Part shown: positions 21,001 through 63,000 of the stretch, in pieces
Numbering within the stretch: position 1 is the stretch's first letter
How the letters are laid out: each line of letters begins with the position of its first letter
NCBI GenBank assembly: GCA_965655095.1
Contig: OZ296651.1
Coordinates: forward strand, 5,518,001-5,582,000
DNA length: 64,000 bases
Source of the DNA: Haplodiscus bocki
Taxonomy: Eukaryota
Direction of reading: 5' to 3'
Notes under the pieces: model-generated
The model's database searches: none
What the model was told of the DNA's origin: nothing
Seen by the model: the letters and a program-made list of their open reading frames with translations, nothing else
Translations under genes and position numbers: made by a program

Positions 21001-24000
21001 CGACTGAGACGTTGACAGTGGAAAATTATGTTTCTTCTCGAGGACAATCATTACTTTTTGCAATTTAAGGCGGTTTCCTCCCCTCAGTTTTGCGATGGAT
21101 GGAACTTAAGACAAGATAGTCTGCTTCCGAACGACGTCCTACAAGTAGAAAAGGCCGATTTGGATTCATTTGAAGAAGTTTTGAGCTGCTTGCTGAGAAA
21201 ATTTACTTTATAAACTGAGAATGCACAAATGCATTTTTAACATTTGGCCGCTTCCTCGCATGAAATAGTGGTACCACGACCAAAAGAGTTTCATTGAAAT
21301 ACCTTCTGCAAGTTCAAAACTGTCGACTGAGACCTTGGTGGGAGAGTTCCAATTGGTAGTCTGGCAGGAATGTGATTTTGAATAGCGAGATCAAAAAATA
21401 CCATGTTTTCGGGCTTGTCGATCTATAGCGACTACAGATTGATATGGTCAAGGCCAAGTCTTTTGTTTGAGTTTTGATGAACGAACAATATTCAGATGAT
21501 TGCAGCAGTTTCAAAATTCCAAAATTTTCAGACACTCGGAAGATTTGTCCGTTTTTTGTTTTAAAAAGCATCAATCCATACCTTCTCTCAACTTTTTGAG
21601 GAAGTTTTTTTGAAAGTTTCTGAGGTTCGGTTATCTTTCGACATCTCCGAAAATTTTAACCTCTTCATGAAAAAATGATTTGCATTCACAAAATTTGTCG
21701 TGTCAAAGTTCGATGGAAAAAAGGAGAATCTTCGGAAAGCGAAAATAAATTGTTGGACAACCCCAGACGTAATCGAGGAGAACATCTTATTTTGATACGA
21801 AAGAATCCCACAATGTATGAAACTTTTGTAAAAAAAAATCGGTTCGGAAATGTGTTCGGCGCAGCTATTTTAGGGATACTCGAGTGCAGTGACATCGCAT
21901 ATTCGCACTACAGAAGGCGCTCACAAATCTGCAACACGGAATCTGCGTGACCTTAGCCTTTTTTTGGAAAAGGAAGAAAAATTTCACTGCTGCATTGCTT
22001 TTCTTCGTTTTGAAAAGTTTTTTCGACGGAAAATAATGAGTTTGATCCTGAGAGGTTGTACTTTGACTTTAACGCCTGTGTAAAAGTCAAAAGTGAAGTC
22101 ATTTTCAGTTTTCACTACTTTAGATTTTCCATGTCGCTTCCGATGCGAGTTACAAACCTGACGCTTCTTTTCTCTACGGGCCTTCTACAAATTGCGTGTT
22201 GTCTAGGAACTTGTTGGTTGATTGTCAGTCTATATTCTCAGAGCAAATTGAAATTCCTTCGTTGCTTTTTCTACTTCTAGGCTTTATGGATAAATCGGGA
22301 CTCTGATGCAAAATAAAAAAATCCGGGGTTTTATCTGGTAAAACGTTGTTAGCGGAAAGTCAGCCGGTTGTTTTGGAGGGAAAATATAGGTATCGATGAA
22401 AACCACTAATTTTGCCATTTTTGGCAGATAAAGCTTGCACTGCAGACAAGATCTTTCGGACTATGTTTTTTGAGTAAACCATACGTAAAGAAGAATGTCG
22501 ACTGGGACCTTGATAAGGGAAATCCAGTCAGTAATTTTGAAGAATTGTAAGTTTGGCTTCCGCGGAGATTTAATACTTCATTTCTTCGCAATATCCGGTC
22601 ATCGGTTTTCCGATGCAATTAACCAACCGAAGCTTTATTGTACAAACCTTCTGCTACTGGAGAGATTCCGATTTGGACTATGATGAAACTAATCTAGCTC
22701 GTTGTTTTTGAAGGAAAGGAGTTTGAATATTAAAAACAATCATGCACTAACGGAAATTTTCGCAATATAGGCTTTTCTGAGGTTTCGCTACAAAGGTGCA
22801 AAACCAGGATGTATAATTGAATCGTTAGTGGAGGAAGTCGTGCTGTTTTCCGGAGAATAGTGTGGTTGCATTTTGGGGGAATGTTATTGCTCTCTGCACT
22901 TGTTGACATAATATTTCTACAAACTTTTCGATGCCACGAAACTGACCGAACTTTTTATTTTTCATACCCTCTACCTGCAGAAAATCGACTGAGACGTTGA
23001 CAGTGGAAAATTATGTTTCTTCTCGAGGACAATCATTACTTATTGCAATTTAAGGCGGTTTCATTCCCTCAGTTTTGCGATGGATGGAACTTAAGACAAG
23101 ATGGTCTGTTTTCGAACGACGTCCTGCAAGTAGAAAAGGCAGATTTGGATTCTTTTGAAGAAATTTTCAGCTACTTGCTGAGAAAATTTACTTCATAAAC
23201 TGAGAATGCACAAATGCATTTTCAACAATTGCCCTCTTCCTCGTATGAAATTGTGGTACCACGACCAAAAGAGTTTCATTGAAATACCTTCTGCAAGTTC
23301 AAAACTGTCGACTGAGACCTTGGTGGGAGAGTTCCAATTGGTAGTCTGGCAGGAATGTGATTTTGAATAGCGAGATCAAAAAATGCCATGTTTTCGGGCT
23401 TGTCGATCTTTAGGGACTACATATTGATATGGTCAATGCCAAGTTTTTTGTTTGAGTTTTGATGAACGAACAATATTCAAATGATTGCAGCAGTTTCAAA
23501 ATTCCAAAATTTTCAGACACTCGGAAGATTTGTCCGTTTTTTGTTTTAAAAAGCATCAATCCATACCTTCTCTCAACTTTTTGAGGAAGTTTTTGTGGAA
23601 GTTTCTGAGGTTCGGTTATCTTTCGACTTCTCCGAAAATTTTAACCTCTTTATGAAAAAAATGATTTGCATTCACAAAATTTGTCGTGTCAAAGTTCGAT
23701 GGAAAAAAGGAGAATCTTTGGAAAGCGAAAGTAAATTGTTGGACAACCCCAGACGTAATCGAGGAGAACATCTTATTTTGATACGAAAGAATCCCACAAT
23801 GTATGAAACTTTGGAAAAAAAAATCGGTTCGGAAAAGTGTTCGGAGCAGCTATTTTAGGGATACTCGAGTGCGGTGACATCGCTTATTCGCACCACACAA
23901 GGCGCTCACAAATCTGCAACACTGAATCTGCGTGACGTTTGCCTTTTTTTGGGAAAGGAAGAAAAAGTCCACTGCTGCATTGCTTTTCTTCGTTTTGAAA

Positions 24001-27000
24001 AGTTTTTTCGACGAAAAATAATGAGTTTGATCCTGAGAGGTTGTACATTGACTTTAACGCCTGTGTAAAACTCAAAAATGAAGTCATTTTCAGTTTTCAC
24101 TACTTTAGATTTTCCATGTCGCTTCCGATGCGAGTTACCAACCTGACGCTTCTTTTCTCTACGGGCCTTCTACAAATTGCGTGTTGTCTGGGAACTTGTT
24201 GGTTGATTGTCAGTCTATATTCTCAGAGCAAACTGAAATTCCTTCGTTGCTTTTTCTACTTCTAGGCTTCATGGGTAAATCGAGGCTCTGATGCAAAATA
24301 AAAAAATCCGAGGTTTTTCTGGAAAAACTTTGATAGCAGAAAGTCAGCCGGTTGTTTTGGAGGGAAAATATAGGTATCGATGAGAACCACTAATATTGCC
24401 ATTTTTGGCAGATAAAGCTTCCAATGCAGACAAGATCTTTCGGACTATGTTTTTTGAGTAAACCATACGTAAAGAAGAATGTCGACTGGGAACTTGATAA
24501 GGGAAATCCAGTCAGTAATTTTGAAGAATTGTAAGTTTGGCTTCCGCGGAGATTTAATACTTCATTTCTTCGCAATATCCGGTCATCAGTTTTCCTATGC
24601 AATTAACCAACCGAAGCTTTATTGTACAAACCTTTTTGCAACTGGAGAGATTCCGATTTGGACTATGATGAAACTAATCTAGCTCGTTGTTTTTGAAGGA
24701 AAGGAGTTTGAATATTAAAAACAATCTTGCACTAACGGAAATTTTCGCAATATAGGCTTTTCTGAGGTTTCGCTACAAAGGTGCAAAACCAGGATGTATA
24801 ATTGAATCGTTAGTGGAGGAAGTCGTGCTGTTTTCCGGAGAATAGTGTGGTTGCATTTTGGGGGAATGTTATTGCTCTCTGCACTTGTTGACATAATATT
24901 TCTACAAACTTTTCGGTGCCACGAAACTGACCGAACTTTTTACTTATCATACCCTCTACCTGCAGAAAATCGACTGAGACGTTGACAGTGGAAAAGTATG
25001 TTTCTTCTCGAGGACAATCATTACTTATTGCAATTTAAGGCGGTTTCATTCCCTCAGTTTTGCGATGGATGGAACTTAAGACAAGATAGTCTGTTTCCGA
25101 ACGACGTCCTGCAAGTAGAAAAGGCAGATTTGGATTCTTTTGAAGAAATTTTCAGCTGCTTGCTGAGAAAATTTACTTCATAAACTGAGAATGCACAAAT
25201 GCATTTTCAACAATCGGCCTCTTCCTCGTATTAAATTGTGGTACCACGACCAAAAGAGTTTCATTGAAATACCTTCTGCAAGTTCAAAACTGTCGACTGA
25301 GACCTTGGTGGGAGAGTTCCAATTGGTAGTCTGGCAGGAATGTGATTTTGACTAGCGAGATCAAAAAATGCCTTGTTTTCGGGCTTGTCGATCTTTAGGG
25401 ACTACACATTGATATGGTCAATGCCAAGTTTTTTGTTTGAGTTTTGATGAACGAACAATATTCAGATGATTGCAGCAGTTTCAAAAAGCCAAAATTTTCA
25501 GACACTCGGAAGATTTGTCCGTTTTTTGTTTTAAAAAGCATCAATCCCTGCCTTCTCTCAAGTTTTTGACGAAGTTTTTCTGAAAGTTTCTGAGGTTCGG
25601 TTATATTTCGACTTCTCCGAAAATTTTAACCTCTTTATGAAAAAAATGATTTGCATTCACAAAACTTGTCGTGTCAAAGTTCGATGGAAAAAAGGAGAAT
25701 CTTTGGAAAGCGAAAATCAATTGTTGGACAACCCCAGACGTAATCGAGGAGAACATCTTATTTTGATACGAAAGAATCCCACAATGTATGAAACTTTTGT
25801 AAAAAAAATCGGTTCGGAAAAGTGTTCGGAGCAGCTATTTTAGGGATACTCGAGTGCAGTGACATCGCATATTCGCACTACACAAAGCGCTCACAAATCT
25901 GCAACACTGAATCTGCGTGACGTTAGCCTTTTTTCGGAAAAGGAAGAAAAAGTCCACTGCTGCATTGCTTTTCTTCGTTTTGAAAAGTTTTTCCGACGGA
26001 AAATAATGAGTTTGATCCTGAGAGGTTGTACATTGACTTTAACGCCTGTGTAAAAGTCAAAAATGAAGTCATTTTCAGTTTTCACTACTTTAGATTTTCC
26101 ATGTCGCTTCCGATGCGAGTTACAAAGCTGACGCTTCTTTTCTCTACGGGCCTTCTACAAATTGAGTGTTGTCTAGGAACTTGTTGGTTGATTGATTGTC
26201 AGTCTATATTCTCAGAGCAAATTGAAATTCCTTCGTTGCTTTTTCTACTTCTAGGCTTTATGGGTAAATCGGGCCTCTGATGCAGAATAAAAAAATCCGA
26301 GGTTTTTTCTGGAAAAACTTTGATAGCAGAAAGTCGGCCGGTTGTTTTGGAGGGAAAATATAGGTTTCGATGAAAACCACTAATTTTGCCATTTTTGGCA
26401 GATAAAGCTTGCAATGCAGACAAGATCTTTCGGACTATGTTTTTTGAGTAAACCATACGTAAAGAAGAATGTCGACTGGGACCTTGATAAGGGAAATCCA
26501 GTCAGTAATTTTGAAGAAATGTAAGTCCGGCTTCCGTGGAGATTTAATACCTCATTTTTTTGCAATATCCGGTCATCAGTTTTCCTATGCAATTAACCAA
26601 CCGAAGCTTTAACGTACAAACTTTCTGCAAGTAGAGAGATTCCGATTTGGACTGTGATGAAAGTAATCTAGCTCGTAGTTTTTGAAGGAAAGTAGTTTGA
26701 ATATTAAAAACAATCATGCACGAACGAAAATTTTCACAATATAGGCTTTTCTGAGGTTTCGCCACAAAGGTGCAAAACCAGGATGTATAATTGAATAGTT
26801 AGTGGAGGAAGTCGTGCTGTTTTCCGGAGAATAGTGTGGTTGCATTTTGGGGGAATGTTATTGCTCTCTGCACTTGTTGACATAATATTTCTACAAACTT
26901 TTCGGTGCCACGAAACTGACCGAACTTTTTTTTTCATACCCTCTACCTGCAGAAAATCGACGGACATGTTGACAGTGGAAAATTATGTTTCTTCTCGAGG

Positions 27001-30000
27001 ACAATCATTACTTTTTGCAATTTAATGCTGTTTCATTCCCTCAGTTTTGCGATGGACGGAACTTAAGACAAGATAGTCTGTTTCCGAACGACGTCCTACA
27101 AGTAGAAAAGGCCGATTTGGATTCTTTTGAAGAAGTTTTCAGCTGCTTGCTGAGAAAATTTACTTTATAAACTGAGAATGCACAAATGCATTTTCAACAT
27201 TTGGCCTCTTCCTCGTATGAAATTGTGGTACCACGACCAAAAGAGTTTCATTGAAATACCTTCTGCAAGTTCAATACTGTCGACTGAGACCTTGGTGGGA
27301 GAGTTCCAATTGGTAGTCTGGCAGGAATGTGATTTTGACTAGCGAGATCAAAAAATGCCATGTTTTCGGGCTTGTCGATCTTTAGGGACTACACATTGAT
27401 ATGGTCAATGCCAAGTTTTTTGTTTGAGTTTTGATGAACGAACAATATTCAGATGATTGCAGCAGTTTCAAAGTTCCAAAATTTTCAGACACTCGGAAGA
27501 TTTGTCCGTTTTTTGTTTTAAAAAGTATCAATCCATACCTTCTCTCAACTTTTTGACGAAGTTTTTGTGAAAGTTTCTGAGGTTCGGTTATATTTCGACT
27601 TCTCCGAAAATTTTAACCTCTTTATGAAAAAAATGATTTGCATTCACAAAACTTGTCGTGTCAAAGTTCGATGGAAAAAAGGAGAATCTTTGGAAAGCGA
27701 AAATCAATTGTTGGACAACCCCAGACGTAATCGAGGAGATCATCTTATTTTGATACGAAAGAATCCCACAATGTATGAAACTTATGTAAAAAAAATCGGT
27801 TCGGAAAAGTGTTCGGAGCAGCTATGTTAGGGATACTCGAGTGCGGTGACATCGCATATTCGCACTACACAAAGCGCTCACAAATCTGCAACACTGAATC
27901 TGCGTGACGTTAGCCTTTTTTCGGAAAAGGAAGAAAAAGTCCACTGCTGCATTGCTTTTCTTCGTTTTGAAAAGTTTTTCCGACGGAAAATAATGAGTTT
28001 GATCCTGAGAGGTTGTACATTGACTTTAACGCCTGTGTAAAAGTCAAAAATGAAGTCATTTTCAGTTTTCACTACTTTAGATTTTCCATGTCGCTTCCGA
28101 TGCGAGTTACAAAGCTGACGCTTCTTTTCTCTACGGGCCTTCTACAAATTGAGTGTTGTCTAGGAACTTGTTGGTTGATTGATTGTCAGTCTATATTCTC
28201 AGAGCAAATTGAAATTCCTTCGTTGCTTTTTCTACTTCTAGGCTTTATGGGTAAATCGGGCCTCTGATGCAGAATAAAAAAATCCGAGGTTTTTTCTGGA
28301 AAAACTTTGATAGCAGAAAGTCGGCCGGTTGTTTTGGAGGGAAAATATAGGTTTCGATGAAAACCACTAATTTTGCCATTTTTGGCAGATAAAGCTTGCA
28401 ATGCAGACAAGATCTTTCGGACTATGTTTTTTGAGTAAACCATACGTAAAGAAGAATGTCGACTGGGACCTTGATAAGGGAAATCCAGTCAGTAATTTTG
28501 AAGAAATGTAAGTCCGGCTTCCGTGGAGATTTAATACCTCATTTTTTTGCAATATCCGGTCATCAGTTTTCCTATGCAATTAACCAACCGAAGCTTTAAC
28601 GTACAAACTTTCTGCAAGTAGAGAGATTCCGATTTGGACTGTGATGAAAGTAATCTAGCTCGTAGTTTTTGAAGGAAAGTAGTTTGAATATTAAAAACAA
28701 TCATGCACGAACGAAAATTTTCACAATATAGGCTTTTCTGAGGTTTCGCCACAAAGGTGCAAAACCAGGATGTATAATTGAATAGTTAGTGGAGGAAGTC
28801 GTGCTGTTTTCCGGAGAATAGTGTGGTTGCATTTTGGGGGAATGTTATTGCTCTCTGCACTTGTTGACATAATATTTCTACAAACTTTTCGGTGCCACGA
28901 AACTGACCGAACTTTTTTTTTCATACCCTCTACCTGCAGAAAATCGACGGACATGTTGACAGTGGAAAATTATGTTTCTTCTCGAGGACAATCATTACTT
29001 TTTGCAATTTAATGCTGTTTCATTCCCTCAGTTTTGCGATGGACGGAACTTAAGACAAGATAGTCTGTTTCCGAACGACGTCCTACAAGTAGAAAAGGCC
29101 GATTTGGATTCTTTTGAAGAAGTTTTCAGCTGCTTGCTGAGAAAATTTACTTTATAAACTGAGAATGCACAAATGCATTTTCAACATTTGGCCTCTTCCT
29201 CGTATGAAATTGTGGTACCACGACCAAAAGAGTTTCATTGAAATACCTTCTGCAAGTTCAATACTGTCGACTGAGACCTTGGTGGGAGAGTTCCAATTGG
29301 TAGTCTGGCAGGAATGTGATTTTGACTAGCGAGATCAAAAAATGCCATGTTTTCGGGCTTGTCGATCTTTAGGGACTACACATTGATATGGTCAATGCCA
29401 AGTTTTTTGTTTGAGTTTTGATGAACGAACAATATTCAGATGATTGCAGCAGTTTCAAAGTTCCAAAATTTTCAGACACTCGGAAGATTTGTCCGTTTTT
29501 TGTTTTAAAAAGTATCAATCCATACCTTCTCTCAACTTTTTGACGAAGTTTTTGTGAAAGTTTCTGAGGTTCGGTTATATTTCGACTTCTCCGAAAATTT
29601 TGACCTCTTTATGAAAAAAATGATTTGCATTCACGAAATTTGTCGTGTCAAAGTTCGATGGAAAAAAGGAGAATCTTTGGAAAGCGAGAATAAATTGTTG
29701 GACAACCCCAGACGTAATCGACGAGAACATCTTATTTTGATACGAAAGAATCCCACAATGTATGAAACTTTTGAAAAAAAATCGGTTCGGAAAAGTATTC
29801 GGAGCAGCAATTTAAGGGATAATCGAGTGCGGTGACATCGCATATTCGCACTACACAAGGCGCTCACAGATCTGCAACACTGAATCTGCGTGACGTTAGC
29901 CTTTTTTTGGAAAAGGAAGAAAAAGTCCACTGCTGCATCGCTTTTCTTCGTTTTGAAAAGTTTTTTCGACGAAAAATAATGAGTTTGATCCTGAGAGGTT

Positions 30001-33000
30001 GTACATTGACTTTAACGCCTGTGTAAAAGTCAAAAATGAAGTCATTTTCAGTTTTCACTACTTTAGATTTTCCATGTCGCTTCCGATGCGAGTCGCAAAC
30101 CTGACGCTTCTTTTCTCTACGGGCCTTCTACAAATTGCGTGTTGTCTAGGAACTTGTTGGTTGATTGTCAGTCTATATTCTCAGAGCAAATTGAAATTCC
30201 TTCGTTGCTTTTTCTACTTCTAGGCTTTATGGGTAAATCGGGCCTCTGATGCAGAATAAAAAAATCGGAGGTTTTTTCTGGAAAAACTTTGATAGCAGAA
30301 AGTCAGCCGGTTGTTTTGGAGGGAAAATATAGGTATCGATGAGAACCACTAATATTGCCATTTTTGGCAGATAAAGCTTCCAATGCAGACAAGATCTTTC
30401 GGACTATGTTTTTTGAGTAAACCATACGTAAAGAAGAATGTCGACTGGCACCTTGATAAGGGAAATCCAGTCAGTAATTTTGAAGAATTGTAAGTTTGGC
30501 TTCCGCGGAGATTTAATACTTCATTTTTTCGCAATATCTGGTCATCATTTTTCCTATGCAATTAACCAACCGAAGCTTTATTGTACAAACCTTCTGCAAC
30601 TAGAGAGATTCCGATTTGGACTATGATGAAACTTATCTAGCTCGTAGTTTTTGAAGTAAAGGAGTTTGAATATTAAAAACAATCATGCACGAACGAAAAT
30701 TTTCGCAATATAGGCTTTTCTGAGGTTTCGCTACAAAGATGCAAAACCAGGATGTATAGTTGAATCGTTAGTGGAGGAAGTCGTGCTGTTTTCCGGAGAA
30801 TAGTGTGGTTGCATTTTGGGGGAATTTTATTGCTCTCTGCACTTGTTGACATATTAATTCTACAAACTTTTCGGTGCCACGAAACTGACCGAACTTTTTA
30901 CTTTTCATACCCTCTACCTGCAGAAAATCGACTGAGACGTTGACAGTGGAAAATTTTGTTTCTTCTCGAGGGCAATCATTACTTTTTGCAATTTAAGGCG
31001 GTTTCATTCCCTCAGTTATGCGATGGATGGAACTTAAGACAAGATAGTCTGTTTCCGAACGACGTCCTACAAGTAGAAAAGGCCGATTTGGATTCTTTTG
31101 AAAAAGTTCTCAGCTGCTTGCTGAGAAAATTTACTTTATAAACTGAAGATGCACAAATGCATTTTCAACATTTGGCCTCTTCCTCGTATGAAATTGTGGT
31201 ACCACGACCAAAAGAGTTTCATTGAAATACCTTCTGCAAGTTCAAAACTGTCGACTGAGACCTTGGTGGGAGAGTTCCAATTGGTAGTCTGGCAGGAATG
31301 TGATTTTGACTAGCGAGGTCAAAAAATGCCATGTTTTCGGGCTTGTCGATCTTTAGGGACTACACATTGATATGGTCAATGCCAAGTTTTTTGTTTGAGT
31401 TTTGATGAACGAACAATATTCAGATGATCGCAGCAGATTCAAAAAGCCAAAATTTTCAGACACTCGGAAGATTTGTCCGTTTTTGTTTTAAAAAGCATCA
31501 ATCCCTGCCTTCTCTCAAGTTTTTGACGAAGTTTTTCTGAAAGTTTCTGAGGTTCGTTTATATTTCGACTTCTCCGAAAATTTTAACCTCTTTATGAAAA
31601 AAATGATTTGCATTCACAAAACTTGTCGTGTCAAAGTTCGATGGAAAAAAGGAGAATCTTTGGAAAGCGAAAATCAATTGTTGGACAACCCCAGACGTAA
31701 TCGAGGAGATCATCTTATTTTGATACGAAAGAATCCCACAATGTATGAAACTTATGTAAAAAAAATCGGTTGGGAAAAGTGTTCGGAGCAGCTATGTTAG
31801 GGATACTCGAGTGCGGTGACATCGCATATTCGCACTACTTAAAGCGCTCACAAATCTGCAACACTGAATCTGCGTGACGTTAGCCTTTTTTTGGAAAAGG
31901 AAGAAAAAGTTCACTGCTTCATTGCTTTTCTTAGTTTTGAAAAGTTTTTTCGACGAAAAATAATGAGTTTGATCCTGAGAGGTTGTACATTGACTTTAAC
32001 GCCTGTGTAAAAGTCAAAAATGAAGTCATTTTCAGTTTTCACTACTTTAGATTTTCCATGTCGCTTCCGATGCGAGTTACAAAGCTGACGCTTCTTTTCT
32101 CTACGGGCCTTCTACAAATTGAGTGTTGTCTAGGAACTTGTTGGTTGATTGATTGTCAGTCTATATTCTCAGAGCAAATTGAAATTCCTTCGTTGCTTTT
32201 TCTACTTCTAGACTTTATGGGTAAATCGGGACTCTGATGCAAAATAAAAAAATCCGAAGTTTTATCTGGTAAAACGTTGTTAGCGGAAAGTCAGCCGGTT
32301 GTTTTGGAGGGAAAATATAGGTATCGATGAAAACCACTAATTTTGCCATTTTTGGCAGATAAAGCTTGCAATGCAGACAAGATCTTTCGGACTATGTTTT
32401 TTGAGTAAACCATACGTAAAGAAGAATGTCGACTGGGACCTTGATAAGGGAAATCCAGTACGTAATTTTGAAGAAATGTAAGTCCGGCTTCCGTGGAGAT
32501 TTAATACTTCATTTTTTCGCAATATCCGGTCATCAGTTTTCCTATGCAATTAACCAACCGAAGCTTTAATGTACAAACTTTCTGCAAGTAGAGAGATTCC
32601 GATTTGGACTGTGATGAAAGTAATCTAGCTCGTAGTTTATGAAGGAAAGTAGTTTGAATATTAAAAACAATCATGCACGAATGAAAATTTTCACAATATA
32701 GGCTTTTCTGAGGTTTCGCTACAAAGGTGCAAAACCAGGATGTATAATTGAATAGTTAGTGGAGGAAGTCGTGCTGTTTTCCGGAGAATAGTGTGGTTGC
32801 ATTTTGGGGGAATGTTATTGCTCTCTGCACTTGTTGACATAATATTTCTACAAACTTTTCGGTGCCACGAAACTGACCGAACTTTTTTTTTCATACCCTC
32901 TACCTGCAGAAAATCGACGGACACGTTGACAGTGGAAAATTATGTTTCTTCTCGAGGACAATCATTACTTTTTGCAATTTAATGCTGTTTCAATCCCTCA

Positions 33001-35818
33001 GTTTTACGATGGACGGAACTTAAGACAAGATAGTCTGTTTCCGAACGACGTCCTACAAGTAGAAAAGGCCGATTTGGATTCTTTTGAAGAAGTTTTCAGC
33101 TGCTTGCTGAGGAAATTTACTTTATAAACTGAGAATGCACAAATGCATCTTCAACATTTCGCCTCTTCCTCTTATGAAATTGTGGTACCACGACCAAAAG
33201 AGTTTCATTGAAATACCTTCTGCAAGTTCAAAACTGTCGACTGAGACCTTGGTGGGAGAGTTCCAATTGGTAGTCTGGCAGGAATGTGATTTTGACTAGC
33301 GAGATCAAAAAATGCCATGTTTTCGGGCTTGTCGATCTTTAGGGACTACACATTGATATGGTCAATGCCAAGTTTTTTGTTTGAGTTTTGATGAACGAAC
33401 AATATTCAGATGATTGCAGCAGTTTCAAAAAGCCAAAATTTTCAGACACTCGGAAGATTTGTCCGTTTTTTGTTTTAAAAAGTATCAATCCATACCTTCT
33501 CTCAACTTTTTGACGAAGTTTTTGTGAAAGTTTCTGAGGTTCGGTTATATTTCGACTTCTCCGAAAATTTTGACCTCTTTATGAAAAAAATGATTTGCAT
33601 TCACGAAATTTGTCGTGTCAAAGTTCGATCGAAAAAAGGAGAATCTTTGGAAAGCGAGAATAAATTGTTGGACAACCCCAGACGTAATCGACGAGAACAT
33701 CTTATTTTGATACGAAAGAATCCCACAATGTATGAAACTTTTGAAAAAAAATCGGTTCGGAAAAGTATTCGGAGCAGCAATTTAAGGGATAATCGAGTGC
33801 GGTGACATCGCATATTCGCACTACACAAGGCGCTCACAGATCTGCAACACTGAATCTGCGTGACGTTAGCCTTTTTTTGGAAAAGGAAGAAAAAGTCCAC
33901 TGCTGCATCGCTTTTCTTCGTTTTGAAAAGTTTTTTCGACGAAAAATAATGAGTTTGATCCTGAGAGGTTGTACATTGACTTTAACGCCTGTGTAAAAGT
34001 CAAAAATGAAGTCATTTTCAGTTTTCACTACTTTAGATTTTCCATGTCGCTTCCGATGCGAGTCGCAAACCTGACGCTTCTTTTCTCTACGGGCCTTCTA
34101 CAAATTGCGTGTTGTCTGGGAACTTGTTGGTTGATTGTCAGTCTATATTCTCAGAGCAAACTGAAATTCCTTCGTTGCTTTTTCTACTTCTAGGCTTCAT
34201 GGGTAAATCGAGGCTCTGATGCAAAATAAAAAAATCCGAGGTTTTTTCTGGAAAAACTTTGATAGCAGAAAGTCAGCCGGTTGTTTTGGAGGGAAAATAT
34301 AGGTATCGATGAGAACCACTAATATTGCCATTTTTGGCAGATAAAGCTTCCAATGCAGACAAGATCTTTCGGACTATGTTTTTTGAGTAAACCATACGTA
34401 AAGAAGAATGTCGACTGGGACCTTGATAAGGGAAATCCAGTCAGTAATTTTGAAGAAATGTAAGTCCGGCTTCCGTGGAGATTTAATACTTCATTTTTTC
34501 GCAATATCCGGTCATCAGTTTTCCTATGCAATTAACCAACCGAAGCTTTAATGTACAAACTTTCTGCAAGTAGAGAGATTCCGATTTGGACTGTGATGAA
34601 AGTAATCTAGCTCGTAGTTTATGAAGGAAAGTAGTTTGAATATTAAAAACAATCATGCACGAATGAAAATTTTCACAATATAGGCTTTTCTGAGGTTTCG
34701 CTACAAAGGTGCAAAACCAGGATGTATAATTGAATAGTTAGTGGAGGAAGTCGTGCTGTTTTCCGGAGAATAGTGTGGTTGCCTTTTGGGGGAGTGTTAT
34801 TGCTCTCCGCACTTGTTGACATATTAATTCTACAAACTTTTCGGTGCCACGAAACTGACCGAGCTTTTTACTTTTCATACCCTCCACCTGCAGAAACTCG
34901 ACTGAGACGTTGACAGTGGAAAATTTTGTTTCTTCCCGAGGACAATCATTACTTATTGCAATTTAAGGCGGTTTCATTCCCTCAGTTATGCGATGGATGG
35001 AACTTAAGACAAGATAGTCTGTTTCCGAACGACGTCCTACAAGTAGAAAAGGCCGATTTGGATTCTTTTGAAGAAATTTTCAGCTGCTTGTTGAGAAAAT
35101 TTACTTCATAAACTGAGAATGCACAAATGCATTTTCAACAATTGGCCTCTTCCTCGTATGAAATTGTGGTACCACGACCAAAAGAGTTTCATTGAAATAC
35201 TTTCTGCAAGTTCAAAACTGTCGACTGAGACCTTGGTGGGAGAGTTCCAATTGGTAGTCTGGCAGGAATGTGATTTTGAATAGCGAGATCAAAAAATACC
35301 ATGTTTTTGGGCTTGTCGATCTATAGGGACTACAGATTGATATGGTCAAGGCCAAGTTTTTTGTTTGAGTTTTGATGAACGAACAATATTCAGATGATTG
35401 CAGCAGTTTCAAAATTCCAAAATTTTCAGACACTCGGAGGATTTGTCCGTTTTTGTTTTCAAAAGCATCAATCCTTACGTTCTCTCAACTTTTTGAGGAA
35501 GTTTTTGTGAAAGTTTCTGAGGTTCGGTTATCTTTCGACTTCTGTGAAAATTTTAACTTCTTCATGAAAAAAAAAATGATTTGCATTCACAAAATTTGTC
35601 GTGTCAAAGTTCGATAGAAAAAAGGAGAATCTTTGGAAAGCGAAAATAAATTGTTGGACAACCCCAGACGTAATCGAGGAGAACATCTTATTTTGATACG
35701 AAAGAATCCCACAATGTATGAAACTTTTGTAAAAAAAAATCGGTTCGGAAAAGTGTTCGGAGCAGCTATCTTAGGAATACTCGAGTGCGGTGACACCGCA
35801 TATGCGTACTCTACAAGG
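1..35818. repeat. Macrosatellite: 18 full tandem units of ~1982-1990 bp plus a ~75-bp partial unit; truncated by the left window edge
   Basis: The anchor GGTTCGGAAA (GGTTGGGAAA in one copy) recurs at 1, 1986, 3968, 5954, 7940, 9924, 11910, 13895, 15885, 17869, 19854, 21841, 23826, 25811, 27798, 29784, 31768, 33754 and 35742. Units are collinear and differ by scattered substitutions and small indels. Similarity breaks after ...CTCTACAAGG at ~35818. Confidence 0.99.
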
Positions 35819-36899: not shown

Positions 36900-39130
36900 T
36901 GCAAACATTCAACGTTGTTGGATACTTTTTTGTCTCAAAATCCAATACTTGTTCGGTTTTCGTTCAGGTTTTTTGAACAGTTTTTTCCTCCTCTTCGAAA
37001 GTGCTCTTTTTCCTACATATGTCAAACAATCTAACGTTTTCTCGACTTTTCGGGGAAAATGGAAAAAATTTTCTGAATTTCCGATATTTAATGGACCTCT
37101 CCGAAATTTTAACCTAATTATGATAGTTGATTTTCAATCGAAAAAGTTTCTCCTGAAGAAGTGGTTCAATTATCAGTTTGTTTTTTGCTTGACCTCAAAC
37201 ACCAGGAAGACCAATTTGAAATTTTTCTCCCGCAGTATTTTGTTTTGTAATTGCTATAGCCCGTTGAGGAGAATAACACTCTGCTATGTATTTTGCTCCG
37301 TATTCAAAGTCACATTCGTCTGTAACTACCGATTGAAATTCTTCGTGAACGCATACACCGGATTATTTCACTGTTCGAAAGTTCTCAATTAAAAAAAAGT
37401 ATCACGCTCACGTTCCTCTTCGGATACTTCATCGAAGAAAAAAGTCAACAACTGTACATGCTTTAGCGTTCCTCCTGTTAAAAAACTGCCTTGGTTTCTC
37501 GCATACAAAACCCAATCGACGGTTAACACCTGTAGAAGGTGAGTGAAAAAATAGATCATTGGTTTAGCTCCTTACGTTGTTGCTCAGATAGACTGATCTT
37601 GACAGAAAGGACAGGCAGGATTGGTTTTCGCGAAATTAAAACCTGTTTTTTTTCCGAAATTGCCGTCAAAATTGTTTCGATTGACGTCTCAAGCAGCATT
37701 TTCACGCTTGTCGTATGTCTTTGCACATTACCAAAGGTAGCATTCCTAGCACGCTGAACCTAATGGACTCTAGGAGCGAAACACTGCGCACACGTATGAT
37801 TCTCCTAGAAAAACAGTCTCGTTCTTTTTCGGGCGTACCGGCTGTATTTCTTCCGTCAAGGTCTGGTTCGATCATCACTTGCGAAAGATACTTCAAATAT
37901 ATTATGTTGGTTTACACTCCTTGCATCGGATTCCTGAAAGGTCCATATTGCCCAAAAGTGCGAACAATTGATTTTCGTGGAAGTCAAACCTCTTGTCTTT
38001 CAAAAGTACTTGCTGGATTTTTCCTTTCAAGTTCCCAATCGAATTAATGATAAAGTTTTGTTAGTTTGCTTCAATTGGAAGTCTGATGTACTGAAAATTT
38101 GAACATACATCTGATTGCCTCTGGTAGTCAAACTCTTTTTCCTCTATCACTCGCGGCTGAATTTGCTCTGTATAGGTCTGAATCCAGAGGTTGTTACTTA
38201 AAGATGGTTACTGTATTCAGTACGGATTTAGAACGGTTACTGAATAGTACGGAATAGTTGAGTGTCCTGCATCTGAAACGTGGAAGTCGGTCAAAAAATG
38301 CAAGCATGGGAAATTCTTCAGAACAATTTTCATCTACTTTTTTCAAAGCCTACTGGCTGCATTTCATCCATCTGGGTGTCCATCTAATATTTTGTACTTG
38401 CAAAACGTTCTCTGATTGTAGAATGTTGTTTCTTTCCTTCCAAGACAGACTTGATGTATTACGAAAAGTAGCGAGTCCTGGTATGATTATTTTCGATTGT
38501 GAAACTCAGTTACCAAAGTTATCGACTGGATTTCTTCCAGAAGAATCTGAATTGACAGCTTCCTTGGAGAAGTTCGTTCAATTTTTCATCTTGGGTTACT
38601 TTACTTTCACAGGAAGTGTGAAAGAAATAAACTACCAAACCTTTCACAGTCTTAAGATCTTTCTGAAAAATCAAACTGAGTTTTATTCAAAACTTTTGGC
38701 TGTCTTCCTATATGGAAAAGGCTACTCGGTGAACGTATTTCAGAAGTAAAGGTGAAAAGCGTGATACTAAGTGGTTTGTGTTTAACTTATTTTTGGTCAG
38801 CTGGATTTTCTTGATCAAAGTCTCACTTGACGGGTTTTTATTTTCAGGCTCTTCAATGATATGTCGTGGGCTCTGTTCGTTGCTTCGGAGTCTTCAAAAA
38901 TCCATGACGAACAAAGCAATGGCAGATGTGATTTTCGGAAAAAAACGTTCAAATGAAGTTTCAAGACATTTCTCGTTTTTTAAATAACTTTTGCAATATC
39001 TGGTCATAAAATGTTGCAGTCGGGTGAAAAATATGCCCGTGGTAGCTGACCGTCTCGTTTAACAATTCCGTGTGTTCAATTTTACAAGATAGTCGGTCAG
39101 CCGGAAAAACTAGCGTCATAGAAACCATGC
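36900..39130. repeat. Old degenerate relatives of the array unit / ~165-bp repeat family, mixed orientation
   Basis: 36990-37115 (+) aligns with unit positions ~1690-1810 (CTCCGAAATTTTAACCT vs CTCCGAAAATTTTAACCT). 37960-38045 is an inverted homologue of unit 650-740 (IDFRGSQTSCLSKVLAGFFLSSSQS vs LNLRGSQTYNSSKLLTGFPLSRSQS). TTGCAATATCTGGTCAT at ~38991 matches unit TCGCAATATCCGGTCAT. Confidence 0.7.
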
Positions 39131-45946: not shown

Positions 45947-47421
45947 GTCAGTTGAACGTTTGAAGTACCTTCATCTCTATTGTATTTGTTGCGACCGAGA
46001 AAAAATTTGGACGTCGTAAATGACATCGTAGTTTTTTTTCTGCCAAAAGTTCGCGAGAATAGTCAGTTTCGCAAATCGTTTTGCTGAAAAACTTCGTTTT
46101 GTAATTTTCAGCCAAGGATTCCCCCAAAGATAGCAATATTTAGAGGAGTTGAAGTGGAGCCGATTTTCCCGTTTTGTTTCTATCGTCGAAATATGATGGA
46201 CTAAAAGTGACAGGAAATCCATAAAATGCCGTTTTTAGTCGATTTTGATGGATTTTTTTTTAAATACCATATCAATTCCTTTCATCTAATGCTTATTCGA
46301 AAGCGTGTTAATTTATGTTAATTCATTTGAGTTGAGCTGTTTTCTGAGATTTTTGTTTCCTTTTCTGAAATTGATTGTGCAACTGCTTCAAAGCATATGA
46401 CGTCGGTTTTAGTCATTTTCATCCGTTTTTCTTTTTAACTACCTTCTCAATTTCTTTCATTTTTCAATGTTTGTACTTTTCAATGTTTGTACAACCAAAA
46501 TCAGTTAGTTTGTTTCAAAAGATTTTTTCTTTTTGATAGTTCAGCAATGGTTAGAATTTTTTGACATGCTACCAATTGTCTGTAAAAAGTTCCTTCAGTG
46601 GTGTGCAAGAGATCTTTGCCTCTAGTTTCTCATTCTGTATGAATCAGCTAGTTGAGGACAGTCAAACCTGATGCTATTCGTTAGGCTAGAAATATTCCGA
46701 AGATAGACGAAACTGTTGATTTTTTGGAAGTTTTGGTTCTCTCTGAAAATTTTTCTCAATGTCAAAAGTTTCGGAAGGGAGCTCTTAAAAATGTTATTCA
46801 CTGGCTGGCAAACTCGTAGTAAAAATTTTCAGAGGCGTTATAACGAAAATTTATGTGTCTTTTTGGAACATACATAGGATGGGAGGATTGCAACAATTTT
46901 TTTATTTGCTTCGAGAAACATTTTTGGTTTTTGCAAAGTTTTGGGGTAGTGTCATCAAAAATTTTTGATAAATGCTTTTGTAGGTCTTCCGTAATTTTGA
47001 AATGCGTGGGGGAAAATCAAACTAAAGCGAGAATGTTGACGCATGAAATTTGATTGATTCAATTTGAGTCTGTGGTCTAACTGAAGATTTTTGAAAGCCA
47101 TCTGATTACTTAGTTCATTTAGTTTTAATTTCTATGGTTTTGCTCAGCGCTTCATGGTTGCTTTTATCTTTCGAATTTTATTTGAACTTTATTGTCGCTT
47201 TTTGAAAATTATCTGTTAGTTCACGTAGAATTGGCTCAATTCCATTTTTTTGACTATCCTAGTTTCTTGGCGCCGAATGCCTGTGATCCTTGATGCCTAT
47301 GTTTCTATTGTGCAAATTCGAATCGTCATATGCCCATTTATGTGAAAAAAGTCGGGAAACATTTAGGAAAAAGTAGAAACAGCAGAAATATTAACATTCA
47401 CCTATTGTAATGCTTTTGCAG

Positions 47422-59460: not shown

Positions 59461-61099
59461 ACTGTTCTTGTTCAACCTCATAATTTCTCTCACGCATGCA
59501 TTAACAAGTGAGCGGAAGAAAACGCACGCGTTGAGTGGATGATTTTCGTTCCAAAAATAAATATGGGCGGAAAATATCAAAGCAATATTACCTTGAATGT
59601 TACGGGGAAAATTATTTGTGGCGCTCTGTAGTCCTTCAATTAATCCAATTCTCGAAATAGATTATTATACTCAATGGAGTCGTTATAACATTTTCTCCCA
59701 AGAAAGTTATTCATTGCTCTTCGTTACGTTCTATACTGTACCTCAGACGCTTTTCACTCTTTACTACTTGCCACTACTGTTACGTCTGTCTTGGCCAAAT
59801 TGCATTTAACATATAACGTCGAAACGTGAACAATCGAAAACAACTCAAACACGTGAGCTCTCACGGGCTGAAAAGAAAACGAAACCGCTTTTATTCGAAT
59901 TATTTACCCGCGCGGACTTAAAATAACTAGATGGATGTCATTAAAAATGACGGGATAAAATGGTATCAAAATTATCTTTCTGGGTCTATTTTTCTTTTCA
60001 GACAAAAGCACCCTGCAAAATTTTGAAAAAATTCAATCTTTTTTCAGTTAATTGGAAATGATCATTTAGCTACTAAGTAATTGTTTGCTATTTTTCATCG
60101 TGATATATTACAAAAGGAAAATTTTTCTATTGAATATGTATACTTTTTTCTCCGCTGGTTTGCCATTTCTGGCTGCGCCAACTGACGTCGTACCTGGCTT
60201 TTTTAGTGTAGTGGGATCGAACGAGGCCGGTCTGGTTTCGATTCCCACTAGAACCAGACGTTCTTACATATTGCATCAACTTGTACTATAAACAAGCCTA
60301 GAATTGTCAGAGTCGGTGTCGCCAGTATGGCTCAAAATACTCATAGGAGACATTTGATTTTGATGTTACCAAAAATTACTTTTTGGCATACTTTTTGGTA
60401 GTAAGTGAAGAAAAACAAAGCTCAGACTGGGATTTGAGTATCCTACTTGTCGGTTCGGCAGATTTTATGAAAAGGTATCACGAAAAAGTTTGGGACCTAA
60501 GTTCCACAATTTCTTCGAAAACAAGTAAATTTTTGGTAGTTTTCGGTATAAAATGTTTTTGACGAGAAGCTACATCTGAGAAAACCTTCAGTTATCATCC
60601 ACTCGATTTTCCGCCGACATTTATGCGCTGTTACTCCTATTTGGTGGAAAATCGAGTGGCTGATATTGGAAGGAAAAAGGCACTACACTTGTTTTTTGAA
60701 ACCGATAGTTCATAATTGGGAAAACTCGAGTATACCGAAAATTGGAAGAGTTATCTTTCGATTTTCCGCCAATATTCACGATGGTCAGTATTAACCCTCG
60801 ATTTTCTGCCAATAGTGGTGCCGAAGATCTTTGCGAGTGCGTTAGTAGGATTTTGTACTTTGTTTTACTGCAACAGTCGGCTTATCGTTCGAAACGCCGA
60901 CGTAGAAAATAGTTTGAAAATGTCAGAAAACTTTATTTTCTGTTTTCCAAGTTGCGCAATTTGTGGTATAAAACTCTAAAATTACATTAATGTGTTAGAA
61001 TATATAATGAAACAATAAATAGAATGAATTTTTTCAATAAAACAAACAAAACCTTCAACAACCGTAATATTTCTTCTATCAATATCCCCTTTGATAGGT

Positions 61100-63000
61100 T
61101 TCAACTTGCAGAAGAGCATTCAACACCTGAAACTCTTAGTTTTTTAGCATCAGAATCCTGATTGACAGGAGATGCGAAAAATATCATTAGTTTTGACTCC
61201 CTCGATTTTAAAAATGACTTTTAGCCAAATGTATCTACTTGATTTGATCCATCAGCACATCAATCGGTTGTATGCTTTTTATAAGAGGGAATCTAATGAA
61301 AATGCCAAAATTGAAAATTCCATAGGAATGCTGATTAGTATCGACTATTGTCGATTTTCAAACTCCGCCGTCTGATTTCCCGCATGAATGTCCTCATCGA
61401 CAGTTTGCAACTAGTAAAGCGGCTCTTGAAACAGAAATAGTTGGTTGTGGTCATCTCACTAAAAAGGGCGGAAGTTGCCATTAGTTTCGGCTTTTCTCGA
61501 TTTTCAAAGTCGACTTTTCAAGCTAGTGGCTTCATTTCTTCTGTTGGTGTCTTAATCGAAAGTTTTCAAATTTCAAGAAAGCGTTCAGCAGTAAAATCTT
61601 AAGTGTCGTCAATGCTATTATTTCTCGGAGACCGACAATTCCGAAAAGTGCCATTGTTATTTACTTGTCTCTATTTTCAAACTCACCAATGTTCATAATT
61701 GCCGGTGTGACTTGTCAATGTTTAATCGACAGATTCTACCTTGTAGAAGGGCTTTCGACACTAAGCTCCTGGTTGTGCTCCCTTGCATAGGAATTCTGGT
61801 AGACACAAGTTGTCAAAAGTTCCGTTAAATTTGACTTTTTTCGATTTTCAAGCGCAGTTTTTTCCAATACTACTTGCTGGAATTGTTCCATCAAATCCTC
61901 AATCGACGACTTTCTAAGTGCAAAAGATAAATCAATAGAATTTTACAACTTATTTTTTATGAATAGGAGTTTCAGTAAACGAGAACTATCGAAGAGTGCA
62001 TTTTTCAAATATATTTCTTTGTTTTCGAACTCAACATTCGAATACCACTAGCTAGATTTCTTCCATCAAAAACCTAAGTTGGTACCTGTTAGTTGGTTGA
62101 AAATTTCTTTTTAGATACTCTATGAACTGCCGGATTAGAACCCTAATAAGGTTAAATAGGCAAAACTGCAATAGGGATTGGTATTTGCTGATGATTCATT
62201 TTTCTCCGAAGTACTGGCTTGATGCCTCTCATCGAAATCTCAATTGACAGATTTCCACTTGTTAAAGGGTATCTGCAGCAATTTTTTGGTGTGTTTTTTG
62301 CATCGGAATCGTGATTGGGTGATGAGCCGAAAAGTTTTCTCAGTACATTTTTCTCGACTGTGTTATTCATTTTCCTACAGAATGAATGCCGGATTTCTTC
62401 TATCAAGTAGAAAGTCATTGGACTCTAAAATGTCAAGTTTGTTCTTTCGTTGGGAACTGTGATAGGTTGCAAAAATCAAAAACTGCAACGTATCACCTTT
62501 CTCCCAAAATCAGGCACTTTCCAGTTCAGCACCTTGCGGTAAACTCATAGCATCAAGGCGTCGAAATTTCGACAGCTCGTTTCCGTATAGTTTCATTTGG
62601 GAAAGGTTTATTCAGTTTTGTTCCGTGCTTTGGAACACTTATAGGCCGAAAAATTCAAATGCCGCTGCTATTTGAAAAATCTCATTTATGGAAAGTGCAT
62701 GTATTTTGTGAGAATTTTGTGGTGTTTTTTGATGAATCAATTCTTAGACCTTGTCGACAGAAAATATCGCAGGGCTGCTGCGCTTCTTGTTGCCAATTGC
62801 TCCTAATTTTTGTGGCAAGTGTTGCATGCCGCCAGATCAAAAAGGAATTTCGGAACGAGATAATTTGGTCTGTCTGTTCTTATTTTGGGAACTGCTGGAT
62901 GTAAACATCCTTCTTTCAAACTTTTTTGTAGTACACGGAAGTTTCTACTTGCTGACTGTTTCAATTCACTTCGTGTGCTGTCTACTAAGTGATTCACTTT
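61100..63000. repeat. Ancient degenerate ~140-180-bp tandem repeat homologous (inverted) to the subrepeats of the macrosatellite unit
   Basis: A core resembling CTGGATTTCTTCCATCAAxxTCTCAATCGAC recurs at ~61265, 61400, 61558, 61728, 61908, 62075, 62247 and 62410. Example: the reverse complement near 62247, CCCTTTAACAAGTGGAAATCTGTCAATTGAGATTTCGATGAGAG, vs unit CCTTCTGCAAGTTCAAAACTGTCGACTGAGACCTTGGTGGGAG. Confidence 0.7.

What the first reader, a model, noticed from the sequence alone, without database searches (positions are those of the whole stretch)
61100..63000. Fossil ~55-aa repeat-protein-like motif shared by the array, 37.8-38.6 kb and 61-63 kb
Seen: translating 61-63 kb (+), 37.8-38.4 kb (+) and the array unit (-) gives a recurring motif. 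First half: FSIFKRSFFQYYLLELFHQILNRRLSKCKR (61.84-61.93 kb), TFSQMYLLDLIHQHINRLY (61.2 kb), FFKAYWLHFIHLGVHLIFCTCK (38.35 kb), ISLFRITFLPDCQLELSHQGLSRQF*TCRRYFNETLLVVVP (unit 1540-1410, minus). Second half: CRRAFDTKLLVVLPCIGILVDTSCQKFR (61.75 kb), CERYFKYIMLVYTPCIGFLKGPYCPKVR (37.9 kb), LKLRLVNCIGKLMTGYCKKMR (26.6 kb, minus). Inference: the satellite may have been born from a decayed gene or mobile element encoding an unrecognised Cys-containing tandem-repeat protein, i.e. an abundant unannotated family. All copies here are broken by stops and frameshifts, so a purely non-coding ancient satellite is equally possible. This is the best candidate for an undescribed system in the window.
Basis: partly seen in the sequence, partly recalled or inferred. 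Interest (0 to 1): 0.8.

Follow-up and report, generated by a model that had tools for sequence, protein, structure and literature searches.

The report
Transposon inner repeats, not a protein
The recurring "55-amino-acid motif" is the six-frame translation of a non-coding ~175-base tandem repeat carried inside a very common rolling-circle (Helitron/Helentron-type) non-autonomous transposon, one truncated copy of which was multiplied head-to-tail into the 2-kb satellite; this is a known way for satellites to arise.

Summary
All seven peptide strings are at the stated coordinates. They reflect a true DNA repeat shared by the array unit (minus strand), 37.2-38.9 kb and 61.1-62.7 kb. The repeat has a 163-bp core and a median period of about 175 bp, not 165.

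The protein reading fails. The monomer consensus has stops in all six frames. The period does not preserve frame. Column conservation and mismatch spacing show no 3-base periodicity. Only 17% of indels are multiples of three. pN/pS is 0.82-0.94 and amino-acid identity 25-26% in all six frames. No Pfam or database relative was found, and the genome search found only short or stop-broken frames.

The 61-63 kb copy lies in an element spanning 60,089-62,791. It has a 12-bp 5' subterminal inverted repeat with its own complement, central repeats, the inverted copy near the 3' end, a GC palindrome and a sharp terminus. This is the published HINE (non-autonomous Helentron) layout. The termini occur hundreds of times in the genome and the monomer thousands of times.

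The 1,985-bp satellite unit starts exactly at such a 5' end and lacks a 3' end. That fits published rolling-circle tandemisation of truncated Helitrons.

An earlier follow-up on this window (s1-376508) reached the same transposon-derived reading. Interest is low.

The parts
1..35818 (-). Satellite array: 18 head-to-tail units of about 1,985 bp, with the element oriented on the minus strand. The array continues upstream on the chromosome for at least 120 kb.
   Evidence: Spacings are 1982-1990 bp at 95-100% identity. The array edge is at 35,818. A further 40 or more units lie on C4 at 5.43-5.55 Mb.
10107..10118 (-). 5' subterminal inverted repeat (TATTTTCCGTCG) that opens each satellite unit. 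It is present once per unit, and an IR-like complement follows at 10090->10081.
   Evidence: There are 18 matches on the minus strand, one per unit, against 0.47 expected by chance. Sequence and fold are and the junction alignment.
9517..10106 (-). Left flank (LF) of the satellite unit, holding a short 12-bp minisatellite at 9676-9708.
   Evidence: It lies between the 5' subTIR and the first monomer. L043 holds a dispersed relative of this LF with the same 5' end.
8364..9516 (-). Block of about 8 diverged ~175-bp monomers inside the satellite unit.
   Evidence: nhmmer hits have E-values from 1e-5 to 8e-21.
8135..8363 (-). Tail of the unit. It is possibly further decayed monomers. It has no 3' subTIR or palindrome and abuts the next unit's 5' subTIR.
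   Evidence: Only one weak monomer hit was found (E 0.07). There is no similarity to the right flank of element B (score 22 against a null of 23 +/- 3.6).
37240..38919 (+). Second dispersed block of about 10 monomers. It holds the 110-aa and 163-aa chance ORFs. No termini were recognised.
   Evidence: nhmmer results are, the ORFs, and Pfam found nothing.
46160..46286 (+). Solitary monomer fragment.
   Evidence: nhmmer E-value 8e-6.
60089..60122 (+). 5' end of element B: the 5' subTIR (60089-60100, mutated copy) plus its complementary IR (60111-60122).
   Evidence: Homology with L053 and L054 begins here. The consensus 34-mer occurs 351 times in the genome and 0 times in the reversed control.
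60290..60861 (.). Unrelated dispersed or foldback repeats nested in the left flank of element B (approximate limits).
   Evidence: These stretches hit separate genomic families, some as inverted pairs. An internal 31-nt inverted repeat lies at 60585-60673. The LF alignment breaks near 60,285.
61105..62662 (+). Central tandem repeats of element B: about 10 monomers with a 163-bp core and a period of about 175 bp. This is the finding's 61-63 kb motif.
   Evidence: nhmmer hits have E-values down to 6e-31. The monomers are position-specific orthologues of those in L053 and L054.
62755..62766 (+). 3' subterminal inverted repeat (CGACAGAAAATA), the reverse complement of the 5' subTIR.
   Evidence: Seen. 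The 31-mer containing it occurs 730 times in the genome and 0 times in the control.
62768..62782 (+). GC-rich palindrome (5-6 bp stem) lying 9 nt from the 3' terminus.
   Evidence: The stem folds, and the consensus CGCAGC/GCTGCG is conserved across copies.
62783..62791 (+). 3' terminus (YTCTTGTT). Homology with all other copies stops here.
   Evidence: A sharp common end is seen in 9-12 copies.

Best explanation
The motif is the translation of a non-coding ~175-bp tandem repeat that forms the central module of a high-copy, non-autonomous rolling-circle transposon of the Helentron-associated (HINE / DINE-1-like) type. The sequence shows each element's layout. It has a 12-bp 5' subterminal inverted repeat followed by its own complement, a left flank, 8-12 old and diverged monomers, a right flank with the inverted copy of the 12-mer, a GC palindrome and a fixed terminus. 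The sequence also shows that the monomer array was already present in the master copy and is inherited as a block. It is inferred that copies are moved in trans by the RepHel transposases that this genome encodes in many intact copies, which would recognise the terminal hairpins. It is also inferred, from a published model, that the 1,985-bp satellite arose when a copy that had lost its 3' terminator was replicated round and round. That would give a head-to-tail array of 3'-truncated elements, each starting at the 5' end. No protein is, or was, encoded by the repeats.
For: The repeat is real and shared. Several tests argue against coding. The consensus has 8 stops per three units in every frame. 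The period is 175-178 bp, with multiples of three in only 8/41 and 16/37 spacings. Column conservation has no period-3 signal (rank 34 of 81). Mismatch co-occurrence is 0.0619 at lag 3 against 0.0625-0.0639 at other lags, over 91 alignments between homologous blocks. Only 320 of 1,863 indels are multiples of 3. A simulated coding pattern would raise lags 3, 6 and 9 by about 30%. pN/pS is 0.82-0.94 and amino-acid identity 25-26% in all six frames. The ORFs have no Pfam family and no database relative by word search. Own-genome six-frame hits are at most 43% identical where they align 60 residues or more, up to 51% over shorter stretches, and are mostly stop-ridden. The transposon anatomy is supported by a sharp common 3' end with palindrome, a 5' end with subTIR and IR, and a 12-nt inverted match between the two ends. 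Copy numbers are 351 (5' 34-mer), 730 (3' 31-mer) and 4,505 (24-nt monomer core), with 0 in reversed controls. Monomers are positionally orthologous between copies. The layout equals the HINE definition in PMC4067079 and the oyster Cg_HINE elements with 140-180-bp central repeats in PMC7492417. The satellite unit begins at the 5' subTIR and lacks a 3' end, as in the truncated-Helitron tandem arrays described in PMC12628747. Other long-period arrays of the same family exist at periods of about 2.5, 3.15 and 1.6 kb. The genome has at least 147 Helitron_like_N matches with open frames up to 2,780 aa.
Against: Only three copies with both ends were available (window B, L053, L054), and individual copies are mutated, so the exact first and last base and the TT target preference are not settled. 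No clear microsatellite was found in the left flank. No autonomous element was shown to share these termini. Stops are mildly depleted against dinucleotide shuffles (z about -6), but equally on both strands, and open stretches of 100 codons or more are somewhat over-represented (30 against 18 +/- 4). I attribute this to shared ancestry and T-rich composition. No RNA data could be obtained.
Confidence: 0.8

Rival explanations
1. Fossil gene: the monomers are decayed copies of a ~55-aa Cys-containing repeat domain of an unrecognised protein.
For: The peptides recur. Two stop-free stretches of 110 and 163 codons lie in 37.7-38.7 kb. Open stretches of 100 codons or more are mildly over-represented.
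Against: No frame stands out over 4,000 monomer pairs. There is no 3-periodicity in conservation or in mismatch spacing, and 83% of indels shift the frame. The period does not preserve frame. The consensus is closed in all six frames. Stop depletion is symmetrical between strands. Pfam, the word search and the own-genome six-frame search found no relatives beyond weak, stop-ridden hits. The repeats sit inside a non-coding transposon architecture.
Confidence: 0.02
2. Satellite first: the ~175-bp repeat was an ordinary free-standing satellite. A rolling-circle element later captured it, so the dispersed blocks and the array are secondary spreads of a satellite rather than a repeat born in the transposon.
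For: Helitron-type elements capture host DNA, including tandem repeats (PMC12628747). In oysters the same repeat exists both inside elements and as free arrays (PMC7492417). Blocks such as 37.2-38.9 kb have no recognisable termini here.
Against: Monomers within a block are only about 55-65% alike, and they are positionally orthologous between element copies. So in every copy examined they travel as element cargo. No homogeneous free array with a 175-bp period was seen, and TRF reports no array with a ~175-bp period in the window. The long arrays seen have whole-element periods of 1.6-3.2 kb.
Confidence: 0.1
3. Another transposon class: a cut-and-paste MITE or foldback element with short terminal inverted repeats and internal tandem repeats, with the 2-kb satellite arising by unequal crossing-over rather than rolling-circle replication.
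For: A 12-bp inverted repeat is present at both ends. MITEs with internal tandem repeats that seed satellites are known (PMC12628747). The TT target could not be confirmed.
Against: The ends are asymmetric. The 3' repeat is subterminal and is followed by a GC palindrome and a fixed 9-nt tail. The 5' repeat is followed by its own complement. No target-site duplication is visible in the three complete copies. The satellite unit is phased exactly on the 5' terminus and lacks the 3' end, which unequal exchange does not predict.
Confidence: 0.07

Closest known systems
Cg_HINE elements of the Pacific oyster (non-autonomous Helentrons carrying satDNA-like central repeats; PMC7492417)
   Same: Both have a left flank with a 5' subTIR (11-12 bp) plus a complementary IR a few bases away, and a central array of 140-180-bp monomers. 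Both have a short conserved right flank with a 3' subTIR followed by a palindrome. Both are dispersed in high copy number and lack coding capacity.
   Different: The sequences are unrelated as far as could be tested. Arrays here are longer (8-12 monomers against about 3-5 on average) and much more diverged internally. No clear microsatellite sits at the end of the left flank. The host is a different animal, which earlier notes of this scan suggest is a coral (not verified here).
DINE-1 / HINE families of Drosophila, mite and Culex (PMC4067079)
   Same: The architecture is the same: subTIRs of 12-15 bp, a palindrome 8-35 bp from the 3' end, optional central tandem repeats that can make up half of the element, no target-site change, and high copy number.
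   Different: The family criteria could not be tested against an autonomous partner. [quoted passage not shown] According to earlier notes of this scan, the autonomous rolling-circle elements of this genome carry a GIY-YIG rather than an AP endonuclease.
Tandem arrays of truncated Helitrons made by rolling-circle amplification (Xiong, Dooner and Du 2016, as summarised in PMC12628747)
   Same: The array consists of whole-element units that each keep the 5' end and lack the 3' terminator. The family contains an internal repeat that could delete the terminator by recombination. There are tens to hundreds of units.
   Different: That work concerns plant centromeric Helitrons. Here the element is HINE-like in an animal. 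The predicted single 3' end at the far edge of the array lies outside the window and was not seen.
DINE-TR1 / 154TR-type satellites that expand from Helitron central repeats
   Same: A satellite derives from a Helitron-type element that carries ~150-bp inner repeats.
   Different: There the inner monomer itself is expanded into the satellite. Here the satellite unit is the whole truncated element (1,985 bp), and the inner monomers stay old and diverged.

Membership tests
HINE (Helentron-associated interspersed element; PMC4067079, PMC7492417) | No coding capacity | tested here: met
   No Pfam hit was found and there is no codon signature in any frame. The consensus is closed in six frames.
HINE | Subterminal inverted repeats of 11-15 bp, the 5' one within a few bases of the end | tested here: met
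   TATTTTCCGTCG sits at the 5' end and its reverse complement at 62755-62766. The consensus is confirmed by 351 and 730 genomic matches.
HINE | IR complementary to the 5' subTIR a few bases downstream (DINE-1 / Cg_HINE type) | tested here: met
   In the genomic consensus the 5' 34-mer is subTIR + 10 nt + complement. The L054 copy folds with z = -3.5.
HINE | Palindrome (5-10 bp stem) 8-35 bp from the 3' end, after the 3' subTIR | tested here: met
   The CGCAGC...GCTGCG stem ends 9 nt from the terminus and is conserved across copies.
HINE | Central tandem repeats (optional; 140-180 bp in oysters) | tested here: met
   There are 8-12 monomers per element with a median period of 175 bp.
HINE | Microsatellite in the left flank | tested here: inconclusive
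   Only a 12-bp x 2.8 repeat was found in the array's left flank, plus faint 11-12-bp repeats in L053 and none in L054.
HINE | Insertion into TT / T-rich sites without target-site duplication | tested here: inconclusive
   No duplication is seen in the three complete copies. The flanking bases are not consistently T, and no empty sites could be fetched.
HINE | Shares subTIRs and the last 60 bp with an autonomous Helentron of the same genome | not tested
   The period is 175-178 bp, the mod-3 classes are roughly even, and the consensus has stops in every frame.
   pN/pS is 0.82-0.94 in all six frames. There is no lag-3 signal, and 83% of indels are not multiples of 3.
Centromere-type higher-order repeat (12 x 165 bp) | The whole unit is built of monomers that are homogenised between units but distinct within the unit | tested here: not met
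   Only about 1.15 kb of the 1,985 bp is monomeric. The rest is the element's left flank, starting at the 5' subTIR.

The most novel reading that the evidence does not exclude
This HINE-like family may be the non-autonomous partner of the unusual GIY-YIG-bearing Helitron-like elements that other notes of this scan report in this genome. The satellite arrays of 120 kb or more with 1.6-3.2-kb units would then be direct products of their rolling-circle replication after loss of the 3' terminator. That would give a natural system, outside plants, in which satellite birth by a rolling-circle transposase could be traced unit by unit.
Probability: 0.25. Interest if true: 0.4.

Novelty: new member of a known kind. 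Interest (0 to 1): 0.15.

Why it matters
The result removes a false lead: there is no undescribed repeat-protein family here. It also gives the window's dominant feature a concrete origin, as a satellite made of 3'-truncated rolling-circle transposon copies. It defines the family's terminal motifs, which can be used to mask or annotate many thousands of copies in this genome. By a rough extrapolation the monomers may number about 1e5. The phenomenon itself, satellite-like repeats carried and tandemised by Helitron/Helentron elements, is already well described in oysters, Drosophila and plants.

Tried and rejected
Plain autocorrelation of the unit and of 61-63 kb showed no clear period, because the monomers are too diverged and indel-rich. 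Profile search was needed instead.

TRF does not see the monomers.

I first took the 500-bp repeat at 59,080-59,576 for the element's 5' end. It proved to be an independent dispersed family that lies next to monomer blocks in either orientation or without them.

The left flank looked tRNA-like by eye (a GGTTCGATTCC B-box-like motif). ARAGORN and Rfam give nothing.

The exact-seed inverted-repeat finder missed the subTIRs in the mutated copies. They emerged from alignments and from genome-wide pattern counts.

Searching the genome with the non-monomer half of the satellite unit returned only the array itself.

No 3' end could be found in the satellite unit or after the 37-39 kb block.

A metagenome scan for the 3' 31-mer was blank.

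The large HMMER representative search and structure prediction were not used. There is no stop-free consensus to submit, and the non-coding verdict does not rest on absence of relatives.

Full report
**What is in the window.** Bases 1-35,818 are 18 head-to-tail copies of a unit of about 1,985 bp at 95-100% identity. The same array continues upstream on the chromosome for at least another 120 kb. The remaining 28 kb is AT-rich, repeat-laden eukaryotic DNA. It contains a decayed pogo-type transposase and one long serine-rich ORF. The genome is 1.5 Gb in size.

**Checking the observation.** They are not independent coincidences. BLASTN with short words shows self-similarity within 61.1-62.1 kb at offsets of about 173, 321 and 635 bp. 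It also shows similarity to 37.9-38.6 kb on the same strand and to the array unit on the opposite strand.
- An nhmmer profile iterated from one monomer (61,728-61,905) recovers about 8 monomers per array unit (8,364-9,516, minus strand).
- It recovers about 10 monomers in 37,240-38,919 and about 10 in 61,105-62,662, with E-values down to 1e-36.
- In 40 further loci of the same genome the profile finds blocks of up to about 12 monomers.

The core is 163 bp and the median period is 175 bp. The "55-aa" estimate is therefore slightly short.

- *Consensus frames.* The monomer consensus has stops in all six frames.
- *Period and frame.* Start-to-start spacings cluster at 175-178 bp. Multiples of three make up only 8 of 41 start-anchored and 16 of 37 end-anchored spacings. 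All 209 spacings split 67/83/59 by residue mod 3. No frame can run through successive repeats.
- *Column conservation.* Per-column information content over 261 monomers has no period-3 component (rank 34 of 81 frequencies). The three phases have mean information of 0.78, 0.77 and 0.73 bits.
- *Mismatch spacing.* In 91 alignments of 300 bp or more between homologous blocks of different loci, two mismatches co-occur at lag 3 with probability 0.0619, against 0.0625-0.0639 at lags 2 and 4-9. A simulated coding pattern would raise lags 3, 6 and 9 by about 30%, and a weak one by about 5%.
- *Indel lengths.* Of 1,863 indels, 887 are 1 bp and 365 are 2 bp. Only 320 (17%) are multiples of three.
- *pN/pS.* Over 4,000 random monomer pairs, pN/pS is 0.82-0.94 and amino-acid identity is 25-26% in all six frames.
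This is what picking the best frame of the best pair would produce.
- *Stop depletion.* Stops are mildly depleted relative to dinucleotide shuffles, but equally on both strands (z about -6 each). The longest open stretch in 50 kb of blocks is 202 codons, within the shuffle range of 122-261. Stretches of 100 codons or more are somewhat over-represented (30 against 18 +/- 4). I read this as shared ancestry and T-richness, not selection.
- *Relatives.* The 110-aa and 163-aa ORFs at 37.7-38.7 kb have no Pfam family. The 163-aa ORF has no relative in the word-indexed protein search.
- *Own-genome search.* Six-frame searches of the genome give only weak hits, at most 43% identical where they align 60 residues or more and up to 51% over shorter stretches. 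Most are interrupted by stops, and none is a multi-repeat open frame.

**What it is.** Genomic relatives of 61.1-63.0 kb all stop matching at the same base, window 62,791. The last 40 bases are conserved even between subfamilies that share nothing else, for example L050. They consist of the 12-mer CGACGGAAAATA, a GC palindrome (CGCAGC/GCTGCG stem) and the tail YTCTTGTT.

On the other side, homology with the two longest relatives (L053, L054) begins at window 60,089. There it starts with TATTTTCCGTCG, the exact reverse complement of the 3' 12-mer. Ten bases later comes its own complement.

Genome-wide pattern counts with up to 3 mismatches confirm that these are consensus termini of a large family:

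| Motif | Genomic matches | Reversed control |
|---|---|---|
| 5' 34-mer | 351 | 0 |
| 3' 31-mer | 730 | 0 |
| 24-nt monomer core | 4,505 | 0 |

Only 7 of the 322 profile-detected monomers in my loci match that 24-mer. The true monomer number is therefore probably of the order of 1e5, a rough extrapolation.

The layout is a 5' subTIR with nested IR, left flank, central 140-180-bp tandem repeats, 3' subTIR, a palindrome 8-35 bp from the end, and no coding capacity. This is the published definition of HINEs, the non-autonomous Helentrons (PMC4067079). It matches the oyster Cg_HINE elements that carry satellite-like repeats (PMC7492417).

Monomers at matching positions of different element copies resemble each other more than they resemble their neighbours in the same element. 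The array is therefore old cargo, inherited as a block from master copies. The genome also holds at least 147 Helitron_like_N matches with uninterrupted frames up to 2,780 codons, so rolling-circle transposases are available. I could not show that any of them shares these termini.

**The satellite.** On the minus strand each 1,985-bp unit opens with the 5' subTIR (for example 10,118->10,107), once per unit and 18 times in the window, against 0.47 expected.
- An IR-like complement follows the subTIR.
- Next come about 590 bp of left flank and about 8 monomers.
- The last 229 bp have neither the 3' subTIR nor the palindrome, and run straight into the next unit's 5' subTIR.

The satellite is thus a head-to-tail array of a 3'-truncated element phased on its 5' terminus. 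This is the structure expected from the model of Xiong and colleagues, as summarised in PMC12628747. In that model, recombination between internal repeats removes the 3' terminator from the circular template, and continued rolling-circle replication then yields tandem truncated copies with many 5' ends.

Other arrays of the same family with whole-element periods (about 2.5 kb, 3.15 kb and 1.6 kb) appear in the pattern-hit lists. The mechanism is inferred, not shown. The array edge inside the window is itself 5'-truncated by about 145 bp, and the far edge, where a single 3' end is predicted, lies outside the window.

**What remains open.** The exact terminal bases, the TT target preference and the left-flank microsatellite are unresolved. 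The block at 37.2-38.9 kb has no recognisable termini. Whether the repeat arose inside the element or was captured from a free satellite is not decided. After no further genomic DNA could be fetched.

**Relation to earlier notes.** A follow-up on this same window (s1-376508) had already concluded that the inner ~160-bp repeat is an eight-copy block inherited from a common non-coding mobile element, a piece of which was copied head-to-tail. My independent tests agree. They add the element class, its termini, the phasing of the satellite on the 5' end and the formal rejection of a coding origin. Other notes on this genome (s1-354045, s1-382574, s1-382578) report GIY-YIG-bearing Helitron-like elements and Helentron-type elements with tRNA-like cargo. 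I used them only as leads.

**Verdict.** The protein interpretation is not supported. The feature is a new member of a known kind, and interest is low.

Noticed in passing
window 54112-55705 (-): Decayed pogo/Tigger-type transposase. Three adjacent ORFs carry a DDE_1 domain (E 7e-17) and a weak helix-turn-helix, and are broken by stops or frameshifts.
   Followed up: partly
window 43818-46019 (+): A 733-codon open frame in the only GC-richer stretch of the window (46% GC). It is serine- and proline-rich, has no Pfam family and was not searched further. It may be a real exon or gene.
   Followed up: no
window 59080-59576 (+), also about 36130-36620: An independent ~500-bp dispersed repeat with thousands of first-look candidates in the genome. 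It ends in GGGCGGAAAATATC, which resembles the 3' subTIR of the element described here. In 5 of 8 loci it lies within about 1.5 kb of a monomer block, but in either orientation. The reason for the association is unexplained.
   Followed up: partly
window 60290-60861: Foldback or MITE-like repeats nested in the left flank of element B. They have a 31-nt inverted repeat at 60585-60673 and several GGTGGAAAATCGA-type motifs. Their genomic relatives occur as inverted pairs.
   Followed up: no
L053:4020-4090, L054:4500-4570, window about 60240-60285: The left flank of this subfamily contains a GGTTCGATTCC (tRNA B-box-like) motif followed by a T-run, and an A-box-like TAGTGGTTAATC upstream. ARAGORN and Rfam find no tRNA.
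   Followed up: partly
G000 C3:133.75-134.31 Mb, C9:18.63-18.98 Mb, C1:134.8-135.0 Mb, C23: Helitron_like_N matches with intact frames of 1,800-2,780 codons recur at spacings of about 15-17 kb. These look like head-to-tail arrays of autonomous rolling-circle elements.
   Followed up: no
G000 C2:106172833-106213005, C2:97651255-97657597, C5:66.00-66.07 Mb, C8:54.61-54.64 Mb: Further long-period tandem arrays of the same HINE-like family, seen only as regularly spaced pattern hits. The periods are about 2,506 bp, 3,155 bp and 1,600 bp.
   Followed up: no
G000 C1:79230413-79230850: A 5' 34-mer and a 3' 31-mer lie on the same strand only 407 bp apart. This is probably a short copy of the element without central repeats.
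   Followed up: no
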